Numbered from the stretch's first letter, positions 369-10,251 are shown. The stretch: 43,686 bases of DNA from Perkinsus chesapeaki ATCC PRA-425 (GCA_013115145.1 JAAPAO010000281.1:1-43686); one strand, 5' to 3'. Notes: generated by a model from the sequence alone, not told the origin. A program made the numbers and translations.

Positions 369-390
369 AACACGACTCGTGTTACACGAG
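369..390. other. Inverted-triplication scar (T=AACACGAG), perfect
   Basis: aacacga-ctcgtgtt-acacgag. Confidence 0.9.
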
Positions 391-412
391 AATTAGTCGC
401 GAGCATGACGCA

Positions 413-434
413 TGTTGACAGTCAACAGTTGACT
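413..434. other. Inverted-triplication scar (T=TGTTGACT), perfect
   Basis: tgttgac-agtcaaca-gttgact. Confidence 0.9.
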
Positions 435-836
435 GCGTACCCTGCTTCCATTGGAAGTGTTTTGCCATACCGAGAAATAGGTATTTATTTGGCTTTAATT
501 CACGACGCTCGGCTTCGGAGCGCTGTAGCCCACTGGATTCAGCGTTTAGACTGGATGTTACAGAGTGCGACATCCGTGAGGATTGTTAGATCCTCCAGCA
601 CAGCCTCGTAACTTTCGTGACAGTGTCAACACTCGTCCATGAATGATTTGTCGTGATATGGCCGAAAGTAGTCACAGTAGTTTCCTCACAGTTGAAACTC
701 AAATACAACAGATGCAGGAGTATGTATACTGCGGCGCAAAGGCCTTAACTAGATTAATGGATAGCTGCGTTAGGGAACGCATCGGTACAACAAAGGAGTA
801 TACACCACAAAGTCTACCCCTTTATGTCATTCCCAT

Positions 837-1265
837 TCAATAGCATGTCCCGTTCAATAAGAGGGTCCTCTCACTGCCGCCAAACGTCAACTTCAATTCT
901 TCGTTGTTTTTCTGGGATGTCAATTCTTTCGTATCATTATCACCCACGGTATAGTGATCACGACAGGCTGACTTCATATGTCGAACGAAATCATTGTATT
1001 CACCCTCGGAGCTGGGATCAACAACGTATGAATTGATCTTAGACTCGTCCATATTGAACGGGGACATGCTTGAAACCGAATTGAAGAAGCATTTAACTCG
1101 ATATTCCACAGTCAGAGAAGTTACATCTCCACCGCATTCCACTTCTAAGCAGGTAAACGGCTCTATCAGAACAGCGTAGTGGCCTTTAGGAGTTGGTGGG
1201 AGTCCTCCAACATATAGCGTCATACTGCAGTAGCAGAGAACGGTGAAGACGGAAGTAGTCACCAT
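837..1265 (-). CDS. 142-aa predicted secreted protein, paralog of 9536-9964
   Basis: Single-exon ORF with a hydrophobic N-terminus. Aligns almost ungapped to 9536-9964 (PPTP.G.YA, five mature Cys, NS.VVDP.SE, TVGDND, F.GSER). Confidence 0.85.
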   Translation of the reverse strand: MVTTSVFTVLCYCSMTLYVGGLPPTPKGHYAVLIEPFTCLEVECGGDVTSLTVEYRVKCFFNSVSSMSPFNMDESKINSYVVDPSSEGEYNDFVRHMKSACRDHYTVGDNDTKELTSQKNNEELKLTFGGSERTLLLNGTCY

Positions 1266-1589
1266 GAGCGGAGATAAACTAAGCCTGAGGATACTTTGTT
1301 AAATTGCAATGAAGCCCGACATGAAAGATTTGGACACCTCTTTAGCCTTATCCCGGAGCACGCGTGCACCTGCAATTGTAGGGTAACAAACCAAAGTCCC
1401 AAGGGGTTGGGTAATGGAGAAAATAAAAACCTAGTAATTAGGGAGTGATTTAAGCTGTAGCTTATCCTACATCACTCATAGCTAGGAATATGCGTGCATA
1501 GACAGAATGCAGGAGAGGGAGCACTGTATACAAGGTGACACGATAGGGCTATAGTGGCTCCGCACAATGGCTCCATGGTGCCTTGTCTA

Positions 1590-1611
1590 CACGTGAGTCA
1601 CGTGACGTGAC
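1590..1611. other. Inverted-triplication scar (T=CACGTGAC), perfect
   Basis: cacgtga-gtcacgtg-acgtgac. Confidence 0.88.
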
Positions 1612-1841
1612 GTAGCGCTCTACATTCTAGACTAATGCGACTTGCTCCACACAATTCACATACAGCGGGACAGACTGGAATAATTGTGCTAAAAGAGTCT
1701 CACTTTGATTAGGACTCAAAGAAAAGATTTTGGCGGAATCATGACGTACGACAGTTGGCCCCATACTGATGTGAGCACGATAAGTTAGTGAAGCCTAGGA
1801 ATTCCAGGACTCACTCTACAATTGAACCCACTTTTCCACGA

Positions 1842-1863
1842 GACCGGCCGCCGGTTACCGGCG
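1842..1863. other. Inverted-triplication scar (T=GACCGGCG), 1 mismatch
   Basis: gaccggc-cgccggtt-accggcg (predicted middle cgccggtc). Confidence 0.8.
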
Positions 1864-1956
1864 GTCACCATTTAACTGTGACACCTGAGCAATTACAGCT
1901 GAGATATTATATGCGACCCAATCGGAGGTATTCGTATTAGGCACACTCCTCACATG

Positions 1957-1978
1957 GCGCTATCATAGCGGCGCAATG
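1957..1978. other. Inverted-triplication scar (T=GCGCTATG), 2 mismatches
   Basis: gcgctat-catagcgg-cgcaatg (predicted gcgctat-catagcgc-cgctatg). Confidence 0.65.
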
Positions 1979-2013
1979 TTATTCGGTAAGGTAGTAGAAG
2001 TAAATGGCCTGAC

Positions 2014-2035
2014 ACCGATATTATCGGTCCGATAA
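2014..2035. other. Inverted-triplication scar (T=ACCGATAA), perfect
   Basis: accgata-ttatcggt-ccgataa. Confidence 0.9.
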
Positions 2036-2500: not shown

Positions 2501-2533
2501 ACAGGATCCCCTCACCTGGTGAGGGGATCCTGT
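2501..2533. repeat. Perfect 16-bp-arm palindrome with a 1-nt centre
   Basis: ACAGGATCCCCTCACC-T-GGTGAGGGGATCCTGT. Confidence 0.9.
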
Positions 2534-2809
2534 CCGCCTCGGGTTTCCGAAACACCACATAGATCGATGATTGCTCAGCGGCCGTTGTTTTACACTCCGT
2601 GTAGAATACTAGTACACAGACTCTGCAGTACGGAGGCAATGTGGACCTACTCTTCGGGCATTTGTCCCACCCACAGCGTCGGCAGGGTACCCCAGATTCA
2701 CTTTGTGTGTCAACCAACAGTTTGTGGCTTACCAAGGTCGCAGGGATCTACTGACACCACCCGTATTTACCTCGCTCCCCTTCACAGGGATAGAAGACTT
2801 CTGCCCCCT

Positions 2810-2974
2810 AATGGGGAAACTTTAACACGACGCCAGTTGGCGCAAAGTACAACTAAGAACACTAACATGCTTATAACAACAAGTCTCTAGCGACGATCAC
2901 TCCTGGGGAAATCCCAAGCGCTCGAACATTTAGTCCTGCGCCCGCCTGGGAAATCGATACAATTTGAGCAATCA
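2810..2974 (-). repeat. 3' LTR (165 bp)
   Basis: Base-for-base identical by eye to 9276-9440. Minus strand starts TGATTG and ends CCCCATT. Preceded by the PPT. Confidence 0.93.
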
Positions 2975-2984
2975 CGCCCCCCTC
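2975..2984 (-). other. Polypurine tract (PPT)
   Basis: Minus-strand GAGGGGGGCG immediately 5' of the 3' LTR. Confidence 0.75.
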
Positions 2985-2992
2985 GGCGGCAC

Positions 2993-5539
2993 CTAGTGCC
3001 GTCCGACCGAGTCGCCTAGCTCCCATTGTTCACCATCCAACCACAGCCGTTCGTCCGGAGATCCATCCCTCCAACGAACTTGGACATGACCGCTCTTAAA
3101 CTCTCGAATAACATCAGCTTCATACCAATGTAGTCCTCTTTCCCCCCGCACCCTTAACTTGACTTTGATAGGCATCCCAATTCGGTTCGGAGAGCTCTGT
3201 ATATCGCGGGTGCAATCCAACATAGGGTCGTCGCTTTCGTCCAAGTCCAAACAATCTTGCTCCATATCACGAGTCACCGGAAGCAAATTGTAGATATTCT
3301 CTCGGGTCACTCTTTGTTGTTTACCAGGAAATATAATATCCACGGTATGGTCTCCGCGAATAGCGATGACATGGCCAACGCGCCAGTCAAACCCTAACTT
3401 CCGATTGACAGGAGCATAGACCAACGCTGCAGAACCAATCTCAAAGCTGAAAGCAGTCTTACCCTTTGGACACTTATGCCTAACGGACTCCAGGGCTCGC
3501 TCCTTTAATATTATCCAGTGGTAGTCTACAAATTCTCTGCGCATAATCAGAGCATCGCGGCCGGGGCGTATCGGGTCAGCAGATTTAGCATACCCAAAAG
3601 CTGTCGTGCTGGCCCTTGTATACCCCCAACATAATGAATCAGGAGTAACGATACGCCGCTGGCCCTCGGCATCATGGTAGTAGGACAGAGTCGGACGAGT
3701 GTTGAGCAAGAGACAAACTTCGAGAAGAAGCAAGTCAAGGTCATCATCCGTAAGGTCGGCTACTTTCCCGCAATGTCCGCGGAGCATCACTCGCAGTTTA
3801 CGCCCTCCGAGATCGTGCACCTTCTCATATCGTCCTCCTTCAAAAGGCGAACGTACACTCAAAGGCTCAACTTGAGCTCCGAGAGACTCGTCACAAAGGG
3901 CGCTGAATCTCTGAGTAGAAAAGTAAGAAGCTGCATCGACCACTAATTCCTTCAAGCCACCCATCTCCAACTGGACCTTCCTCAAGGTCATCATGACAGT
4001 AGAAAGGTCTTCGCGTGGCGCTCGTTTCCAACATGTATGACCAGTAACCAAACACGTCACACTGATGACCTTCCGCCCTTCGCCCAATGCATAATAGTCG
4101 ACCCCACAACGATAGTAAGGAGGGTAGAATTTCAATCTTTCCACATGCCCCTTACCCAGGCTAGGCGGGGTAACCCACACTCGGCGAGCACGTGCTAGCT
4201 GGCACGTGAGACACGTCTGTATAAGCCTCTTCGCGACTTGTTCGGCGCCCTTCATGTGGAAGTCGCATATCGCAGAGCAGGTGCCAGGAATAGCACTATG
4301 CCTTGTCTCTCGATGGGCTGTTCTCACCACCAGACTTCTCACATCTTTGGCCGACTTCGGGAGTATAGGTAAGAAGCTCACTCGACCAGAGGCGTGTCCG
4401 GTTCGATACGCCAAATAACTCGCAGTGGTACCATCAACCTCCAGTCTAAATAAGGGACCGCAAGGCCGTAAGTTAGACGTGTCATCCGCGTCGACTTCTG
4501 ACGAATACTTCTCATCATACAACTGAGCGCTCCGACAAACAAGCTTATCCATTGCCGCTGGGTCATAACGTCTCAGTTGTACTGGCTTCTTAGTAGCATT
4601 AGCTCGGAGTATATCAAGAACACAGCAAGCACCCCAGACCACCCGCCGGAGCGAAGACAAATCGTAGCATACCTTCGCTCCCCGTTCAACCAAAGGCTGC
4701 AACTCGCAGGACCTGGATGGAGGTGCAATTCGAAACAACGAATCTGTTTCTATCCCAATGAAAGACACCACATCATAAGCTGAAGCGCCATTCTCGATGG
4801 CCGATAGGGCCAGCCGGACTGCGGGTTCCGTGGCTGCTGCAACTTCGACCGTAGTATCTGCTGCTTCGGCTAATGCTCTCACGTTGTCATCCTCTTGGAG
4901 AATGACGTCTTGCTCTCCTGCCGGCTCCCACTCAGACACTAGGGGGTCGTCTTGGAGAGCACTCGTCACACGCGGCCATCCTTGACCTCTCCGATAACTT
5001 GGATCTCTCGCATAAATCTCATTCTCCCCGCCCCCCTTGCTGAGACACTCAGCCAAAGTGAGACGTGTTCCAGGGACTTTGCGGTCAAACACACGAGAAA
5101 GGGAGTCGGCGGTCTCGTTGGAAGAACCCTGGACGTGACGGATGTCGACTTTCGCCAGTCGTCGTATGGCCAGGAGCTCTTCGTGCAAGGCTCCTACAAG
5201 CCGACTCAAAGAGCGTCTTTCGACGCCACGCGAGTTACCTAAAATCTCGGCACTGTCGACGTTACCAGACCAGCTAACACACGCTGCATTATCGCAGTAT
5301 AACTGTATCTCCACAGCCTCACAGGTCGCGTCAATCGCAACATCATTTCTGTACTTCAGAAAATCATAAAGATCTTGAAGCAGACGAAGCAAACACACTA
5401 CCTCTCGCCGGTTGCTATGCCACTTCAATTCACCAGCTTTGAAACGAAAACTCTCGGCGAATAGCGGATATGAGGATGTCGAATCGACTCTGTAGACCAC
5501 GTATCCTCCACCGCTCAAGCTAGCATCACTATATGGCAT
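2993..5539 (-). CDS. Retrotransposon RNase H + integrase + C-terminal SH3/Tudor-like segment
   Basis: RNase H motifs YSDAS, YCDN and NETADSLSR. Integrase HHCC (HRETRH...CLTC) and DDE (GVDYY, VVDAASYF, GGRYE; D-36-E). Also LNTRP and TPDSL motifs. Confidence 0.93.
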   Translation of the reverse strand: MPYSDASLSGGGYVVYRVDSTSSYPLFAESFRFKAGELKWHSNRREVVCLLRLLQDLYDFLKYRNDVAIDATCEAVEIQLYCDNAACVSWSGNVDSAEILGNSRGVERRSLSRLVGALHEELLAIRRLAKVDIRHVQGSSNETADSLSRVFDRKVPGTRLTLAECLSKGGGENEIYARDPSYRRGQGWPRVTSALQDDPLVSEWEPAGEQDVILQEDDNVRALAEAADTTVEVAAATEPAVRLALSAIENGASAYDVVSFIGIETDSLFRIAPPSRSCELQPLVERGAKVCYDLSSLRRVVWGACCVLDILRANATKKPVQLRRYDPAAMDKLVCRSAQLYDEKYSSEVDADDTSNLRPCGPLFRLEVDGTTASYLAYRTGHASGRVSFLPILPKSAKDVRSLVVRTAHRETRHSAIPGTCSAICDFHMKGAEQVAKRLIQTCLTCQLARARRVWVTPPSLGKGHVERLKFYPPYYRCGVDYYALGEGRKVISVTCLVTGHTCWKRAPREDLSTVMMTLRKVQLEMGGLKELVVDAASYFSTQRFSALCDESLGAQVEPLSVRSPFEGGRYEKVHDLGGRKLRVMLRGHCGKVADLTDDDLDLLLLEVCLLLNTRPTLSYYHDAEGQRRIVTPDSLCWGYTRASTTAFGYAKSADPIRPGRDALIMRREFVDYHWIILKERALESVRHKCPKGKTAFSFEIGSAALVYAPVNRKLGFDWRVGHVIAIRGDHTVDIIFPGKQQRVTRENIYNLLPVTRDMEQDCLDLDESDDPMLDCTRDIQSSPNRIGMPIKVKLRVRGERGLHWYEADVIREFKSGHVQVRWRDGSPDERLWLDGEQWELGDSVGRH

Positions 5540-7245
5540 ATAGTATATGCGCTCAGCTTCAGCGTCGAATTACCCGCCGAAAGATCTCGGACTAACGATC
5601 GGTGGTCACATACTTCGACCAACAACTCGGCCATCCACTCGATCAAGCAGAGGTATGCACATTGTAATTCATGGTTTAAAGTCTGTATGTGGATTTCGAC
5701 CAACCAATCGATCTTCGCAAACTGACGACCAACCAATGACCGCAGAGAGTCAGCGCATGCTCTTGCTAGGACATGTTGACGCGCGGGATCAAAGGCTAAG
5801 CATCCAGCCGCCTGGAAGACCTGACGCTTTGAGGTAAGAGAACTGCTGCGGGTATGCTCAACGAAGTCCCTCACAACCAGCATACGTTTCTCACGCTTGC
5901 AAACCATTACCATATAGAGGCCCTCGTATCTCACCATCATACCAAGCAGCGAACCTTCCTTTGCCAAATCCGGTGGACTACCGGAGAACTCGGTGGCCAA
6001 GGCTCGGTGGACGTCTTCCTTCACCGCGTCGCAGCTTAACACATGCACTTTCGCGACCTGCGCATCGAAGCCGGCCAACTCCATCACACCCAAGGTTATA
6101 CGAAACCTGTGGAGGACCTGACGTACTTCCCCGCTGAGAGCAACGTCGTCAACAAAAATAATAAGTATGGCAAACCCTCCTGGAATGGGGACAATACGAA
6201 CCTGGCAACCACAGGACCGAGCCAGGTCTATCAACCGACCAAGATTGGCCGATAGGCCGCTAGGACCAACAACTATACCAAAGACTAGACGAGAACTCTG
6301 GAAGGTTCCAATACCCGTATCAAGGGTTAAAACATACGGTTCACCATTGGAATCAACTAGTCTCACCTTGTAGAAGGCGGCTCGGGCATCGCCTATCACA
6401 GTCAACCTCCCCCCGAGCGCTCGCATAGCAACAATTGGCAGCCATAAACTCGGTGGGTTGGAAGACGCTTTAGGAAGCCTCTCAATTATATCTCGCATGT
6501 CTACCACTAACCTTGGTTTACGGGATCCTCCGGGAAGCAAAAAAACTTGCGCTCCAGGTAGTTCATCCTGTTTGTGTAACCTGTCAGTAGTCTTGGGTTC
6601 CCAAAACTTGGAATCCACGTAAGCTTCAACCAGATCACGGTAGACGCTCTTCAACTTGGGAGTCAGACGTTCATGCAAACGCACTGCATAGGACCTACAA
6701 CGTATCTGACTCGGATTTTCCACTTTAGGCACCATAACTTCACAGATAAATCGTTGGTTAGGTAGATCGAGACGATCAGAGACTCGCGCAGCGCGGACAC
6801 GGGCCTGGTACATGCCACATGTGCTCGGGACCGTCACCCACGATTCAGGCACTAACTCGGATAATAAGTCGTGGATGAAGGCCTTCTCGTCCTCACTAAA
6901 CTTTGGACAACAGGTCTGTAGTGGGGCAGTGCGGCCGGCGAGCAAAGTATCGTGGGGTCGTTGAGTCCCATCTACGACCACCGCGACAGACTCAGTCAAG
7001 ATCTGTTGTACCGGAACAGGAGCTCGGTATATGCAACGGCTCCATCCCGGTCCAGCATAAGCTTCCAAAGAACTTACAATGAGAATTCCCCAATCCGCGA
7101 TGAGTGATCTTCCAGCCAGGATCGACAAATGTGGGCTAGTCGAGTTCGTTGGATTAGGGAGAATCCTTAACCGAGTTAAGTTAACTCGGTTGAAACACAT
7201 AACACACGCTTCAAGTCTACATCCAAGAGACTCAAAGAACAGCAT
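5515..7245 (-). CDS. Retrotransposon reverse transcriptase segment
   Basis: Motifs PRLVVD, IGDARAAFYKVRL, RLVFGIVVGPSGL and FVDD (YxDD equivalent). The frame is open from 7266. Confidence 0.92.
   Translation of the reverse strand: MLFFESLGCRLEACVMCFNRVNLTRLRILPNPTNSTSPHLSILAGRSLIADWGILIVSSLEAYAGPGWSRCIYRAPVPVQQILTESVAVVVDGTQRPHDTLLAGRTAPLQTCCPKFSEDEKAFIHDLLSELVPESWVTVPSTCGMYQARVRAARVSDRLDLPNQRFICEVMVPKVENPSQIRCRSYAVRLHERLTPKLKSVYRDLVEAYVDSKFWEPKTTDRLHKQDELPGAQVFLLPGGSRKPRLVVDMRDIIERLPKASSNPPSLWLPIVAMRALGGRLTVIGDARAAFYKVRLVDSNGEPYVLTLDTGIGTFQSSRLVFGIVVGPSGLSANLGRLIDLARSCGCQVRIVPIPGGFAILIIFVDDVALSGEVRQVLHRFRITLGVMELAGFDAQVAKVHVLSCDAVKEDVHRALATEFSGSPPDLAKEGSLLGMMVRYEGLYMVMVCKREKRMLVVRDFVEHTRSSSLTSKRQVFQAAGCLAFDPARQHVLARACADSLRSLVGRQFAKIDWLVEIHIQTLNHELQCAYLCLIEWMAELLVEVCDHRSLVRDLSAGNSTLKLSAYTICHIVMLA
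5529..5550. other. Inverted-triplication scar (T=CTATATGC), perfect; frameshifts RT/RNase H
   Basis: ctatatg-gcatatag-tatatgc. Collapsing it to T restores KLSAY-SDAS on the minus strand. Confidence 0.92.
7166..7187. other. Inverted-triplication scar (T=CTTAACTC), 1 mismatch; frameshifts PR/RT
   Basis: cttaacc-gagttaag-ttaactc. Removing 14 bp restores VSTEL-RILPN on the minus strand. Confidence 0.88.
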
Positions 7246-9275
7246 ACAACCCAGTCTACCTGGGTATTAACACCATCCGCCAAAGTGACGGCGACAGGCT
7301 TCGACAGTCTCACTGGATCGACTCCAATGATGTCACTCAAACATTCAACAGAAGGTACCAGAAGATAGGATCCGCCGGCGGCTGTGTCAAGAACACAGCG
7401 TCCCGGGAGAACTTTACCACCAGTTGGAGCACCAAAACGAACAGAAACACCAACGATAATTTCAGGAGGGACCATCACTCTCCTGGCCTCCTTAAACTCA
7501 CAGCTTGAAAGAGAACAAACATTATCAGCAAATAACCGATCTATAGAGCCAGAAAGGGCTTGATTTGATACATATGTAGGATAGGATTCTAACTCAGATG
7601 GACATCCGGTTGCGACCGAATCCTGAAGTCGCACTCCATCACGCGTCTCAATTAGAGTTTCGAGTGGACGCCCAGTTTGGGTACGCCCCCCAGTACGAGC
7701 CAAGCGTTCCTGGAACCGCCATGTTCGGAACAGATCCTTAGATAGCCCAGAGATTTTGCTCTTAGCTACTGACTCATCCTTATATCCCAAAATATAATAG
7801 GTCCGACCGGCTTGACTGGTTCGAGGTAGGAAGCCGTCGGGTTGGCTTGACGCGAACAAAGACTTCTTATCCCGGCACCCTCGGCCTGCAACCCCATAAG
7901 CAACAGCGAAGCCCTTAACCCAGTCGGTAGCTCTCACTCGAGGAAGGGATTGGTCTAACACCCTAGCGACGCTAGAGCTATCGTGGCCTTCCACTGGGGT
8001 CTGTACGGACCTGACCGAATCTTGATGTGGGTCAAACTCCTTCTTAACACAGTCTGCTTCTTCCAGTAGACGGCACTCGGTTTTGATGAACTCCGTAAGG
8101 GTAGCCTCAGTACTCCCGTCCAACGAGTGAAACTCAACCGCTACTTCCCAGTCACCTTCCTGAGCTGCACAGCGCTCGCGGCAGCGACGAATGACGCCGA
8201 CCACAACTTCACGGGGTAACTGAGCTAAGACTTTTCTGACGAATTGGACCCTCTGGGCCGTGTCAGTTTGGTGCACGATCCTATAGAGTTCATTGACAGC
8301 GATAATGTCCTTGAGGTAAATCTCCACCCCTGTCACTCCTGGAAATTTCAGCTTCTTCAATCGCTCTTTCAATTCTTCCAATAGGATTGGCCTCTTAGCA
8401 AACTGCTTCTTGCATGCCCCAACAATAACACCCCACCGGTCTCCATGGATCTCGTACAGGGCTAGAGCTCGATCATAGACGGTTGGACATCCTTGTAAAG
8501 TAGGGAGTAGCTTCTGTGTGCAAGTATGACGTAGATCTCGATGAGGAAAAAAAACTTCGCCTGTAACATCGAACTCTCCAGCCCCAATCTCGACGAGAAC
8601 CTCCTCTAAACGGCGGCAATGCTGAGGGAACTTGAACGAGTCCTTCAACTCGACAACGCTCAGTTTCCCAACAACTCCCGCATCACAGTGCCTGCGGGTG
8701 GTACGCTCTCCATTTGACTGTGGACGGGGTGAAGGCAGCACTGATATGAGGTCGTTCACAACTTCTGGTTGACCGTCAGAAAGAGTCTCAGAGGTCCTTG
8801 GGTTTTCGTCAAATTTGAGCGAACGGCGGACGTCCGCAATGGATGCCGCTTCGCGTTCGCCTGCCTTGTGGCTGGTACTTGTCGAGATGTTAGTGACAGC
8901 ACGCATGTTCATGAGCTCTTCAGAACGAAACTCCAGTTCCACGATGTAAGTGATAGCTTCCTCCAATGCCTTCTCGGATTCTCTTTCTCGACGGTGCAAT
9001 TCCTCTAACGCTTCATGATCGTCCTCGGAGTCTCCAATTATGTTGTCCATAGCTTCTCTCACATTCTTTAGCTGGGTCCTCACTCTTCCTCGATAAGACC
9101 TTGCCTTGCGTAACTCTTGTCGAAGCTCGTTCTGGTCGGTGAAGGCTGCTGCTGATTCTCTCCATCCTCGACGCTCGGTGCTGCTATCTTGCGGGTCTTC
9201 CGGCCTGATTTCGATATGTGGGGGCTCTTCTTCGTCCCCTTGAGGGTCACGGTGTATAGACGCAGGTGTCGCCAT
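7176..9275 (-). CDS. Retrotransposon gag plus aspartic protease (N-terminal part of the polyprotein)
   Basis: 699-aa ORF starting right after the 5' LTR, with an N-terminal coiled coil and the protease-like motif CVLDTAAGGSYLL. It terminates inside a 14-bp scar. Confidence 0.8.
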   Translation of the reverse strand: MATPASIHRDPQGDEEEPPHIEIRPEDPQDSSTERRGWRESAAAFTDQNELRQELRKARSYRGRVRTQLKNVREAMDNIIGDSEDDHEALEELHRRERESEKALEEAITYIVELEFRSEELMNMRAVTNISTSTSHKAGEREAASIADVRRSLKFDENPRTSETLSDGQPEVVNDLISVLPSPRPQSNGERTTRRHCDAGVVGKLSVVELKDSFKFPQHCRRLEEVLVEIGAGEFDVTGEVFFPHRDLRHTCTQKLLPTLQGCPTVYDRALALYEIHGDRWGVIVGACKKQFAKRPILLEELKERLKKLKFPGVTGVEIYLKDIIAVNELYRIVHQTDTAQRVQFVRKVLAQLPREVVVGVIRRCRERCAAQEGDWEVAVEFHSLDGSTEATLTEFIKTECRLLEEADCVKKEFDPHQDSVRSVQTPVEGHDSSSVARVLDQSLPRVRATDWVKGFAVAYGVAGRGCRDKKSLFASSQPDGFLPRTSQAGRTYYILGYKDESVAKSKISGLSKDLFRTWRFQERLARTGGRTQTGRPLETLIETRDGVRLQDSVATGCPSELESYPTYVSNQALSGSIDRLFADNVCSLSSCEFKEARRVMVPPEIIVGVSVRFGAPTGGKVLPGRCVLDTAAGGSYLLVPSVECLSDIIGVDPVRLSKPVAVTLADGVNTQVDWVVCCSLSLLDVDLKRVLCVSTELT
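9262..9274 (-). other. Putative primer-binding site
   Basis: TGGCGACACCTGC starts 1 nt after the 5' LTR. TGG is complementary to tRNA CCA. The priming tRNA cannot be identified from this window. Confidence 0.5.
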
Positions 9276-9440
9276 AATGGGGAAACTTTAACACGACGCC
9301 AGTTGGCGCAAAGTACAACTAAGAACACTAACATGCTTATAACAACAAGTCTCTAGCGACGATCACTCCTGGGGAAATCCCAAGCGCTCGAACATTTAGT
9401 CCTGCGCCCGCCTGGGAAATCGATACAATTTGAGCAATCA
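9276..9440 (-). repeat. 5' LTR (165 bp)
   Basis: Identical to 2810-2974. Followed on the minus strand by A-TGGCGACACC (PBS-like, overlapping the gag ATG). Confidence 0.93.
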
Positions 9441-9535
9441 CCCTCCCGCCGCCGCTGACGTGGTAAAACAATTAAGTGCCTGGACAATGAAAAAGTCGAG
9501 GCATGATAAATAGAATATGGTCGTGGGATTGTCGG

Positions 9536-9964: not shown

Positions 9965-10086
9965 TCTAGAGTAACCTTGTCAGAGAAAGCAGTGGAGCTT
10001 GCATCCCTGGTGTCACTCACTTCGTGACCTCGCGACACGGAGATACTGTTTCGGAGTTCTAGATGACGATGAAGTTCACTGAAACT

Positions 10087-10251
10087 CATGGGGGAACTTC
10101 AACACGACGTCAGTTGGCGCAAAGTATCACTCGGAACACTCGCATGCTTATAACAACAATTATCTAGCGGTGATCACTCCTGGGGAACTCCCAAGCGCTC
10201 GAACATTTAGCCCTGCGCCCGCCTGGGAAATCGATACAATTCGAGCAATGA
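10087..10251 (-). repeat. Diverged solo LTR of the same family
   Basis: Co-linear, same-length copy of the LTR with scattered substitutions. Flanked by AACT/AACT (GAAACT if the boundary is shifted by 2 nt). No PBS or internal domain next to it. Confidence 0.9.

What the first reader, a model, noticed from the sequence alone, without database searches (positions are those of the whole stretch)
5515..7266. Both frameshifts in the retrotransposon polyprotein are 14-bp scars; removing them restores one 2084-aa ORF
Seen: the gag-PR, RT and RH-IN ORFs are each offset by -1 frame, and each overlap contains one scar (7166-7187 and 5529-5550). Collapsing them gives VSTEL|RILPN and KLSAY|SDAS, the canonical RNase H first strand. 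The result is a continuous frame from 9275 to 2993 (6283-28=6255 nt, 2085 codons including the stop). There are no other stops or frameshifts, and the LTRs are identical. Inference: either the element was hit twice faster than its LTRs acquired a single substitution, or it was copied in trans from an already scarred template. A third possibility is that the palindromes, which sit near domain boundaries, act as recoding hairpins.
Basis: partly seen in the sequence, partly recalled or inferred. Interest (0 to 1): 0.82.

Follow-up and report, generated by a model that had tools for sequence, protein, structure and literature searches.

The report
Transposon excision scars break a retrotransposon
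A young, single-copy retrotransposon in the shellfish parasite Perkinsus chesapeaki is broken at two places by 14-letter scars of a type found all over this genome, which fit a hAT-type cut-and-paste transposon jumping in and out again; they are damage, not a signal for the ribosome.

Summary
On the minus strand an LTR element (2809-9441) is read in three open pieces, each displaced by -1. Each break is a 22-nt structure (7166-7187, 5529-5550) built as X[1-7] + reverse complement of X[1-8] + X[2-8], where X is an 8-bp target. The net gain is 14 nt. There are no other stops, and the 167-bp LTRs are identical.

With X placeholders at the breaks, distant homologues run straight through both sites with exactly three residues. 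The added letters are therefore not ancestral coding sequence.

The same structure occurs six more times in the non-coding flank (369-2035), and 31 perfect copies occur in 131.7 kb of this genome. Every other target length or offset tested gives zero. The targets show the hAT bias nTnnnnAn, and the genome carries hAT transposase genes.

Best reading: hAT-type insertion and excision, with repair by annealing of the two unfolded flank hairpins, hit the element twice after it integrated. Recoding is rejected: there is no slippery site, and break 1 lies inside the protease. Copying from a scarred template has no support, because the element is single-copy.

This scan had already reported the scar type on other DNA of this genome. 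The new point here is its mutagenic effect on a retroelement.

The parts
9275..9441 (-). 5' LTR (167 bp)
   Evidence: Identical to 2809-2975. A 167-nt contig at twice the flank depth is seen in all DNA runs.
9261..9274 (-). Putative primer-binding site, starting TGG immediately after the LTR
   Evidence: Read directly. The first ATG of the listed ORF (9275-9273) straddles the LTR/PBS junction.
7188..9275 (-). Coding piece A: gag-like region plus the N-terminal part of the aspartic protease (696 codons, no stop)
   Evidence: The DTAAG motif aligns with DSGAG/DTGAG of homologues.
7166..7187 (.). Scar 1: 22-nt inverted triplication of an 8-bp target (net +14), one mismatch. It breaks the frame inside the protease.
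   Evidence: Homologues bridge it with exactly 3 residues. Frame A's stop lies inside it.
5551..7164 (-). Coding piece B: C-terminal part of the protease (ILAGRS) plus reverse transcriptase (538 codons, no stop)
   Evidence: Relatives carry weak RVT_1 matches.
5529..5550 (.). Scar 2: perfect 22-nt inverted triplication (net +14). It breaks the frame one codon before the RNase H DAS motif.
   Evidence: Thirteen homologues bridge it with exactly 3 residues and no gap.
2993..5527 (-). Coding piece C: RNase H plus integrase (844 codons and a TAG stop at 2995-2993)
   Evidence: Colinear with relatives over up to 839 residues.
2977..2984 (-). Polypurine tract (GAGGGGGG) next to the 3' LTR
   Evidence: Read directly.
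2809..2975 (-). 3' LTR (167 bp)
369..2035 (.). Six scars of the same build in the non-coding flank: 369-390, 413-434, 1590-1611, 1842-1863, 1957-1978 and 2014-2035
   Evidence: Four are perfect, one has 1 mismatch and one has 2.
2501..2533 (.). Palindrome with 16-nt arms and a single-base centre, probably a differently repaired hairpin footprint

Best explanation
The element is a recently integrated, single-copy LTR retrotransposon of a rare Ty3/gypsy-like lineage with the order gag-PR-RT-RH-IN. After it integrated, a hAT-type DNA transposon inserted into it and excised again, twice. Each visit left a stereotyped scar and the element can no longer make its polyprotein.

Proposed mechanism (the chemistry is inferred; the sequence signature is shown):
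1. Integration duplicates an 8-bp target X.
2. At excision the transposase nicks one nucleotide into each flank. It seals each flank as a hairpin, so the base next to the element is replaced by its complement.
3. The host opens or resects the hairpins at least 8 nt from the tip.
4. The unfolded left flank then ends in revcomp(X). The unfolded right flank, on the other strand, ends in X.
5. These 8 nt anneal, the flaps are trimmed and the gaps are filled.

The only possible product is X[1-7] + revcomp(X) + X[2-8], which is 22 nt in place of 8, a gain of 14. Because 14 is not a multiple of three, every such scar in a coding region shifts the frame by -1.

The scars are ordinary background mutations of this genome that happened to fall in a neutral retroelement.
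For: Signature:
- Both breaks obey the 22-nt formula.
- In 131.7 kb of this genome there are 31 perfect instances with an 8-bp target and a 1-nt offset. Every other target length (6-10) or offset (0-2) gives none, and shuffles give none.
- Classical short footprints are not enriched.

hAT identity:
- The 8-bp target and the complement of the adjacent base are the hallmarks of Ac/Ds footprints under the hairpin model. Long palindrome arms and microhomology use are also known for them (PMC5873905).
- The symmetrised targets have T at position 2 and A at position 7 in 50% of cases against 26% background, P = 4.5e-5. This matches the Hermes preference nTnnnnAn with 8-bp duplications (PMC10368747).
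- The genome has at least 11 hAT dimerisation-domain matches, with open frames up to 532 aa.

Post-insertion timing:
- Six more scars lie in the adjacent flank, outside the element.
- The element is single-copy by search and by depth.
- Its protein is the only member of its 90% cluster.

The added letters are not coding sequence: homologues fill each break with exactly three residues.

The scars are real DNA: gap-free contigs from two studies carry them.

The process is long-running: scars with 0, 1 and 2 mismatches number 31, 27 and 30.
Against: - I found no occupied site. No resident hAT or derivative with verified terminal repeats and an 8-bp duplication was seen. My one candidate terminal repeat turned out to be a scar itself.
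- MULE transposases, which also make flank hairpins, are at least as common here, with at least 25 matches (PMC5499845). They are disfavoured only because flush-hairpin and 9-bp forms are absent.
- With no second copy of the element, the pre-scar state is inferred from distant homologues at 30-42% identity, not observed.
- The steady-state estimate of scar rate relative to substitution rate is about 0.005 over all sampled DNA. That would make two scars with no LTR difference unlikely (P about 0.01). At the local non-coding density (ratio about 0.03) P is about 0.14.
- The host repair pathway is not identified. Ku gives one weak match and family-A polymerases are present.
Confidence: 0.8

Rival explanations
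1. The scars were already in a master copy. Its RNA was packaged and reverse-transcribed by proteins from an intact relative, so this copy was dead on arrival, which would explain the identical LTRs.
For: The LTRs are identical although there are two lesions. Nothing in the sequence dates the scars relative to integration. At the genome-wide scar-to-substitution ratio, two hits with no LTR change is somewhat unlikely.
Against: No other copy, scarred or intact, exists in the assembly. The nearest relative is a truncated integrase fragment at about 67-70% identity. Interior depth equals flank depth. The protein's 90% cluster has one member. The same scars are dense in the flank, which was never reverse-transcribed. 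The LTRs give only 334 bp of comparison.
Confidence: 0.07
2. The palindromes are programmed -1 frameshift stimulators and the element is expressed as one polyprotein by recoding.
For: Each following ORF is at -1 and overlaps the previous one. Each scar folds into a 9-bp stem in RNA, and the regions fold better than shuffles, with z = -4.0 and -2.7.
Against: - Neither overlap has an X XXY YYZ heptamer or a run of 4 or more identical bases.
- The stop of the upstream frame lies inside hairpin 1.
- Identical structures occur at non-coding sites and fold no better than shuffles in context.
- Homologues are continuous, with three residues at each site.
- Reading through would put about five foreign residues into the protease core and into the first RNase H strand.
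- The hairpin is an automatic consequence of the scar formula.
Confidence: 0.02
3. The scars come from another source. One candidate is a different hairpin-forming transposon superfamily, such as MULE. The other is transposon-independent template switching during replication or repair.
For: MULE transposase domains are abundant in the genome. MULEs make flank hairpins and 8-10-bp duplications (PMC5499845). No occupied hAT site was linked to a scar.
Against: The only form present is the 8-bp target with a 1-nt offset. Flush-hairpin forms (24 nt) and 9- or 10-bp forms are absent. Muta1 excises precisely in more than 90% of events. The target bias matches hAT. Template switching does not explain a fixed 8-bp unit with the adjacent base complemented.
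Confidence: 0.08
4. The 14-nt insertions are assembly or sequencing artefacts at palindromes.
For: Palindromes can cause polymerase and assembler errors.
Against: Contigs from three runs in two studies (2020 and 2022) cover 2946-7400 with zero gaps and at most one differing letter. The structure is stereotyped genome-wide with a target-site bias.
Confidence: 0.01

Closest known systems
Ac/Ds (hAT) excision footprints in plants, budding yeast and Candida albicans, explained by the hairpin model
   Same: The 8-bp target duplication is retained. Palindromic insertions are centred on the complement of the base that adjoined the element. Microhomology is used in the joint. In yeast, palindrome arms reach 20 nt (PMC5873905).
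   Different: In those systems footprints are heterogeneous: 28 types among 128 events in Candida. Here one product, with the complete 8-nt inverted copy and a net gain of 14, is essentially the only detectable form. It is preserved naturally at hundreds of sites per Mb.
Hermes hAT transposase (Musca domestica)
   Same: 8-bp target-site duplications and the target preference nTnnnnAn (PMC10368747). The scars' inferred targets show the same T2/A7 bias.
   Different: No Perkinsus transposase was tested. G at position 1 and C at position 8 are also favoured here. The element responsible has not been identified.
MULE Muta1 transposition
   Same: Double-strand breaks through hairpins on the flanking DNA, and 8-9-bp duplications (PMC5499845).
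   Different: Muta1 excision is more than 90% precise. A flush hairpin would predict 24-nt scars and 9-bp targets would predict 25-27-nt scars. Neither occurs here.
Programmed -1 ribosomal frameshifting at retroviral and retrotransposon gag-pol junctions
   Same: Overlapping ORFs offset by -1, with a stem-loop in the overlap.
   Different: There is no slippery heptamer. The sites lie inside the protease and at the first RNase H strand. Nothing is conserved in relatives. The same structures occur in non-coding DNA.
Ty3/gypsy-type (Metaviridae-like) LTR retrotransposons
   Same: LTRs, a TGG primer-binding site, a polypurine tract, the order PR-RT-RH-IN, and weak RT_RNaseH, Integrase_H2C2 and rve matches in the element or its relatives.
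   Different: The lineage is very divergent. Pfam does not detect its RT, and only 121 relatives turn up among 1.84 billion representative proteins. No BEL/Pao signature family was hit.

Membership tests
hAT-superfamily excision footprint | 8-bp target-site duplication retained at the empty site | tested here: met
   Only the 8-bp form occurs: 31 perfect instances, against 0 for targets of 6, 7, 9 or 10 bp. Both scars in the element fit it.
hAT-superfamily excision footprint | Palindromic insert centred on the complement of the base that adjoined the element (flank hairpin with a 1-nt offset nick) | tested here: met
   Only offset 1 occurs. Offsets 0 and 2 give 0. The feature is described for Ac/Ds in PMC5873905.
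hAT-superfamily excision footprint | Target preference nTnnnnAn | tested here: met
   T2/A7 occur in 31 of 62 symmetrised positions against 26% background, P = 4.5e-5. The reference is PMC10368747. It is a bias, not a rule: each of the two scars in the element matches only the A7 half.
hAT-superfamily excision footprint | hAT transposase genes present in the same genome | tested here: met
   PF05699 gives at least 11 matches over the cut-off, with open frames up to 532 aa.
hAT-superfamily excision footprint | An occupied site or an observed excision event that links a hAT element to a scar | not tested
   No terminal repeats with an 8-bp duplication were verified.
Programmed -1 ribosomal frameshift site | In-phase slippery heptamer X XXY YYZ in the overlap | tested here: not met
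   None in either overlap, and no homopolymer of 4 or more bases.
Programmed -1 ribosomal frameshift site | Overlap and stimulator conserved in related elements, at a gene boundary | tested here: not met
   Relatives are continuous through both places. The sites lie inside the protease and next to the RNase H DAS motif.
Programmed -1 ribosomal frameshift site | Stable downstream RNA structure | tested here: inconclusive
   9-bp stems form. They follow automatically from the scar formula, and the upstream frame's stop lies inside hairpin 1.
LTR retrotransposon | Direct terminal repeats, a primer-binding site, a polypurine tract and a PR-RT-RH-IN polyprotein | tested here: met
   A clean target duplication of the element itself could not be fixed: the flanking bases agree at 4 of 5 positions.
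   No such Pfam match in the element or in five long relatives. The matches are RT_RNaseH, Integrase_H2C2, rve and RVT_1. No phylogeny was made.

The most novel reading that the evidence does not exclude
In Perkinsus chesapeaki, hAT insert-and-leave events may be so frequent, and their repair so uniform, that +14 scars are a leading cause of frameshift mutation and transposon decay. The evidence here puts their rate at 1.5% or more of the per-base substitution rate. They would then form a countable scar clock that dates insertions independently of LTR divergence. The uniform product would also be a natural genome-wide read-out that this parasite closes hairpin-capped breaks almost only by annealing 8 nt of complementarity.
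Probability: 0.3. Interest if true: 0.6.

Novelty: new variant of a known kind. Interest (0 to 1): 0.45.

Why it matters
- It resolves an apparent paradox of two frameshifts in an element with identical LTRs. No recoding or trans-mobilisation is needed: the lesions belong to a genome-wide mutational process.
- It shows a DNA transposon disabling a retrotransposon. It also gives a first rough bound on how fast such scars arise relative to point substitutions.
- It flags a public gene model as an artefact. KAF4664696.1 (2030 aa) bridges the breaks with invented introns.
- In this genome, any ORF pair offset by -1 should be checked for a 22-nt scar before frameshifting or introns are invoked.

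Tried and rejected
This is impossible. The element is single-copy. The only relative is a truncated integrase fragment on another contig, and its three nearby scars lie outside the homologous part.
- **The best protein hit, P0001 (99% identity).** It is the annotated model of this very locus and therefore not independent.
- **Finding a complete hAT copy with terminal repeats and an 8-bp duplication.** The candidate repeat in one locus was itself a scar, and a 2.8-kb candidate had no second full copy.
- **Fetching 200 kb of further genome for a background density.** I used the 94 kb of loci already held, which is biased towards transposon-rich DNA.
- **Ku and family-A polymerase searches to identify the repair pathway.** Inconclusive.
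- **Papers.** Yu et al. 2004 on Ds hairpin repair in yeast is not held. Searches on Perkinsus transposons and on the P. chesapeaki genome paper gave nothing usable.
- **RNA evidence.** No run holds the stretch as RNA, so expression is unknown.
- **Weaker 22-mer matches inside the element.** The three-mismatch matches at 5039, 6599 and 7173 are partial palindromes or an offset of scar 1, not further scars.

Full report
**What is there**

The window is the whole of a 43,686-bp contig of Perkinsus chesapeaki. The annotated protein of this locus is KAF4664696.1, which sits on a contig of exactly that length.

On the minus strand lies an LTR retroelement.
- Its two 167-bp LTRs (2809-2975 and 9275-9441) are identical.
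- A TGG-initiated primer-binding site follows the 5' LTR.
- A polypurine tract precedes the 3' LTR.
- Three long ORFs lie between them: 7176-9275, 5515-7245 and 2993-5539.

**The two breaks**

The structure follows one rule. It consists of the first seven bases of an 8-bp word X, then the full reverse complement of X, then the last seven bases of X. This is 22 nt in place of 8, a net gain of 14.
- The scar at 5529-5550 is perfect. The scar at 7166-7187 has one mismatch.
- Outside the scars the three coding pieces are open for 696, 538 and 844 codons.
Continuity was tested with X placeholders only.

**Are the extra letters foreign to the protein?**

A full HMMER search with the middle piece found only 121 relatives among 1.84 billion representative proteins. 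The 99% hit is the gene model of this same locus, so I set it aside. That model bridges the breaks with invented short introns and drops conserved residues.

I aligned distant relatives (30-42% identity) to the flanking pieces with XXX at each break.
- At break 2, thirteen relatives run through without any gap. They have exactly three residues before the conserved RNase H DAS motif.
- At break 1, fourteen relatives do the same. The break lies between the protease active-site motif (DTAAG here) and the ILAGRS motif.
- No relative has the roughly five extra residues that the inserted letters would encode.
- Break 1 is therefore inside the protease, not at a domain boundary.

**Are the scars real DNA?**

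Contigs built from three runs in two studies (2020 and 2022) cover 2946-7400 with no gaps and at most one differing letter. The interior has the same depth as the single-copy flank. The 167-nt LTR contig has twice that depth. These are contigs rather than raw reads, and the samples may include the source of the assembly. This excludes a run-specific artefact, but it does not establish population frequency.

**What the scars are**

The same 22-nt build occurs six more times in the non-coding flank, between 369 and 2035. There is no convincing instance in the gene-dense 34 kb to the right.

- There are 31 perfect instances.
- A control scan over target lengths 6-10 and offsets 0-2 gave zero for every other combination, and shuffles gave zero.
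- Classical short hAT footprints are not enriched.
- Instances with 0, 1 and 2 mismatches number 31, 27 and 30, against chance values of 0, 0 and 0.4. This is the flat distribution expected of a process that has run for a long time and is still running.

The signature matches hAT elements.
- An 8-bp unit with the adjacent base replaced by its complement is the signature of hAT excision under the hairpin model, as described for Ac/Ds. Long palindrome arms and microhomology at the joint are also known for Ac/Ds (PMC5873905).
- The inferred targets carry T at position 2 and A at position 7 in 50% of cases against 26% background, P = 4.5e-5. This is the Hermes preference nTnnnnAn for 8-bp targets (PMC10368747).
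- The genome encodes hAT transposases with long open frames.

**How the uniform product arises (inference)**
1. After excision each flank is a hairpin in which the top strand has lost the base next to the element.
2. The host opens or resects both hairpins eight or more bases from the tip.
3. One unfolded flank then ends in the reverse complement of X. The other, on the opposite strand, ends in X.
4. Because of the target duplication these 8 nt are perfectly complementary.
5. Annealing, flap removal and gap filling can give only the observed 22-mer.

The product is its own mirror image under strand exchange, as observed. A flush hairpin, as reported at gel resolution for the MULE Muta1, would give 24 nt, and a 9-bp target would give 25-27 nt. 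Neither exists here, although MULE transposases are abundant in the genome.

The single mismatch in scar 1 lies at the first base that gap filling would add, so it may be a repair error rather than a sign of age. This is speculation.

*Post-insertion hits.* This is the best-supported reading.
- The scar cluster spans the element and flanking DNA that was never reverse-transcribed.
- The element's scar density (0.3 per kb) is below that of its flank (about 2 per kb). It is close to the density of 0.58 per kb, counted at up to one mismatch, in the other fetched loci.
- Identical LTRs are weak evidence, because only 334 bp are compared.
- Conditional on two events, both being scars has probability about 0.03 if scars arise at 1% of the per-base substitution rate, and about 0.14 at 3%.
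- A steady-state estimate from perfect-scar density gives 0.5% over all sampled DNA and about 3% in the local non-coding flank. There is mild tension at most.

*Copying from a scarred template.* This cannot be excluded formally, but nothing supports it. There is no second copy, no helper, single-copy depth, and a protein cluster with one member.

*Recoding.* This is rejected.
- Neither overlap has a slippery heptamer or a homopolymer run.
- The upstream frame's stop lies inside hairpin 1.
- The stems follow automatically from the scar rule and occur equally at non-coding sites.
- Relatives are continuous at both places.

**Family of the element**

Pfam barely recognises it. The hits are Integrase_H2C2 and RT_RNaseH at sub-threshold scores. 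Long relatives add rve and RVT_1. I made no tree.

**Relation to earlier scan notes**

The scar type had already been reported by this scan on other DNA of this genome (s1-234905, s1-225835) and on this window (s1-234906). I derived the formula and ran the tests independently, and they agree. The addition here is the consequence for a coding element, the exclusion of recoding and of assembly error, and a rough rate bound.

**Limits**
- No occupied hAT site was tied to a scar.
- The background sample is small and rich in transposons.
- The repair pathway is unidentified.
- No RNA data cover the locus.

Noticed in passing
window 2501-2533: A perfect palindrome with 16-nt arms around a single central base, without the third (forward) segment. 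It is probably a hairpin footprint repaired in another way.
   Followed up: partly
window 2993-9275 (public model KAF4664696.1): The public 2030-aa gene model bridges both frame breaks with short invented introns and has a further 31-residue gap in the integrase part. It is an annotation artefact of a broken retroelement.
   Followed up: partly
window 10085-10249: A third LTR-like copy, 90% identical to the element's LTRs, lies about 640 bp beyond the 5' LTR. It is probably a solo LTR of a related, older insertion.
   Followed up: no
window 1519-1596: Contigs of runs X2 and X4 break and branch here, just before the scar at 1590-1611. One branch leads into a 2892-nt contig from elsewhere with 6 differences. 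This may be a repeat boundary or an allelic difference at that scar.
   Followed up: no
window 2114 and 3513: The runs of the 2022 study differ from the window at two single bases (G>A and A>C) but share all scars laid on. The scars therefore predate whatever separates these samples.
   Followed up: no
G000, many contigs: At least 25 MULE transposase-domain matches, with open frames up to 1368 aa, and at least 11 hAT matches, many on short contigs. This suggests recently active, collapsed DNA-transposon families.
   Followed up: partly
L002 (G000:C1784:15953-20038) at 469, 1279 and 3130: Three perfect scars surround a truncated integrase fragment. The fragment is 69.5% identical in protein to this element and is its only relative in the genome.
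   Followed up: partly
window 9273-9275: The first ATG of the long ORF straddles the LTR/primer-binding-site junction, so the real start codon is probably further downstream. The gag-like 500 residues have no detectable relatives.
   Followed up: no
scar targets in the window and loci: Besides T2/A7, the symmetrised targets favour G at position 1 and C at position 8 (42%), giving a GT....AC-like preference.
   Followed up: partly
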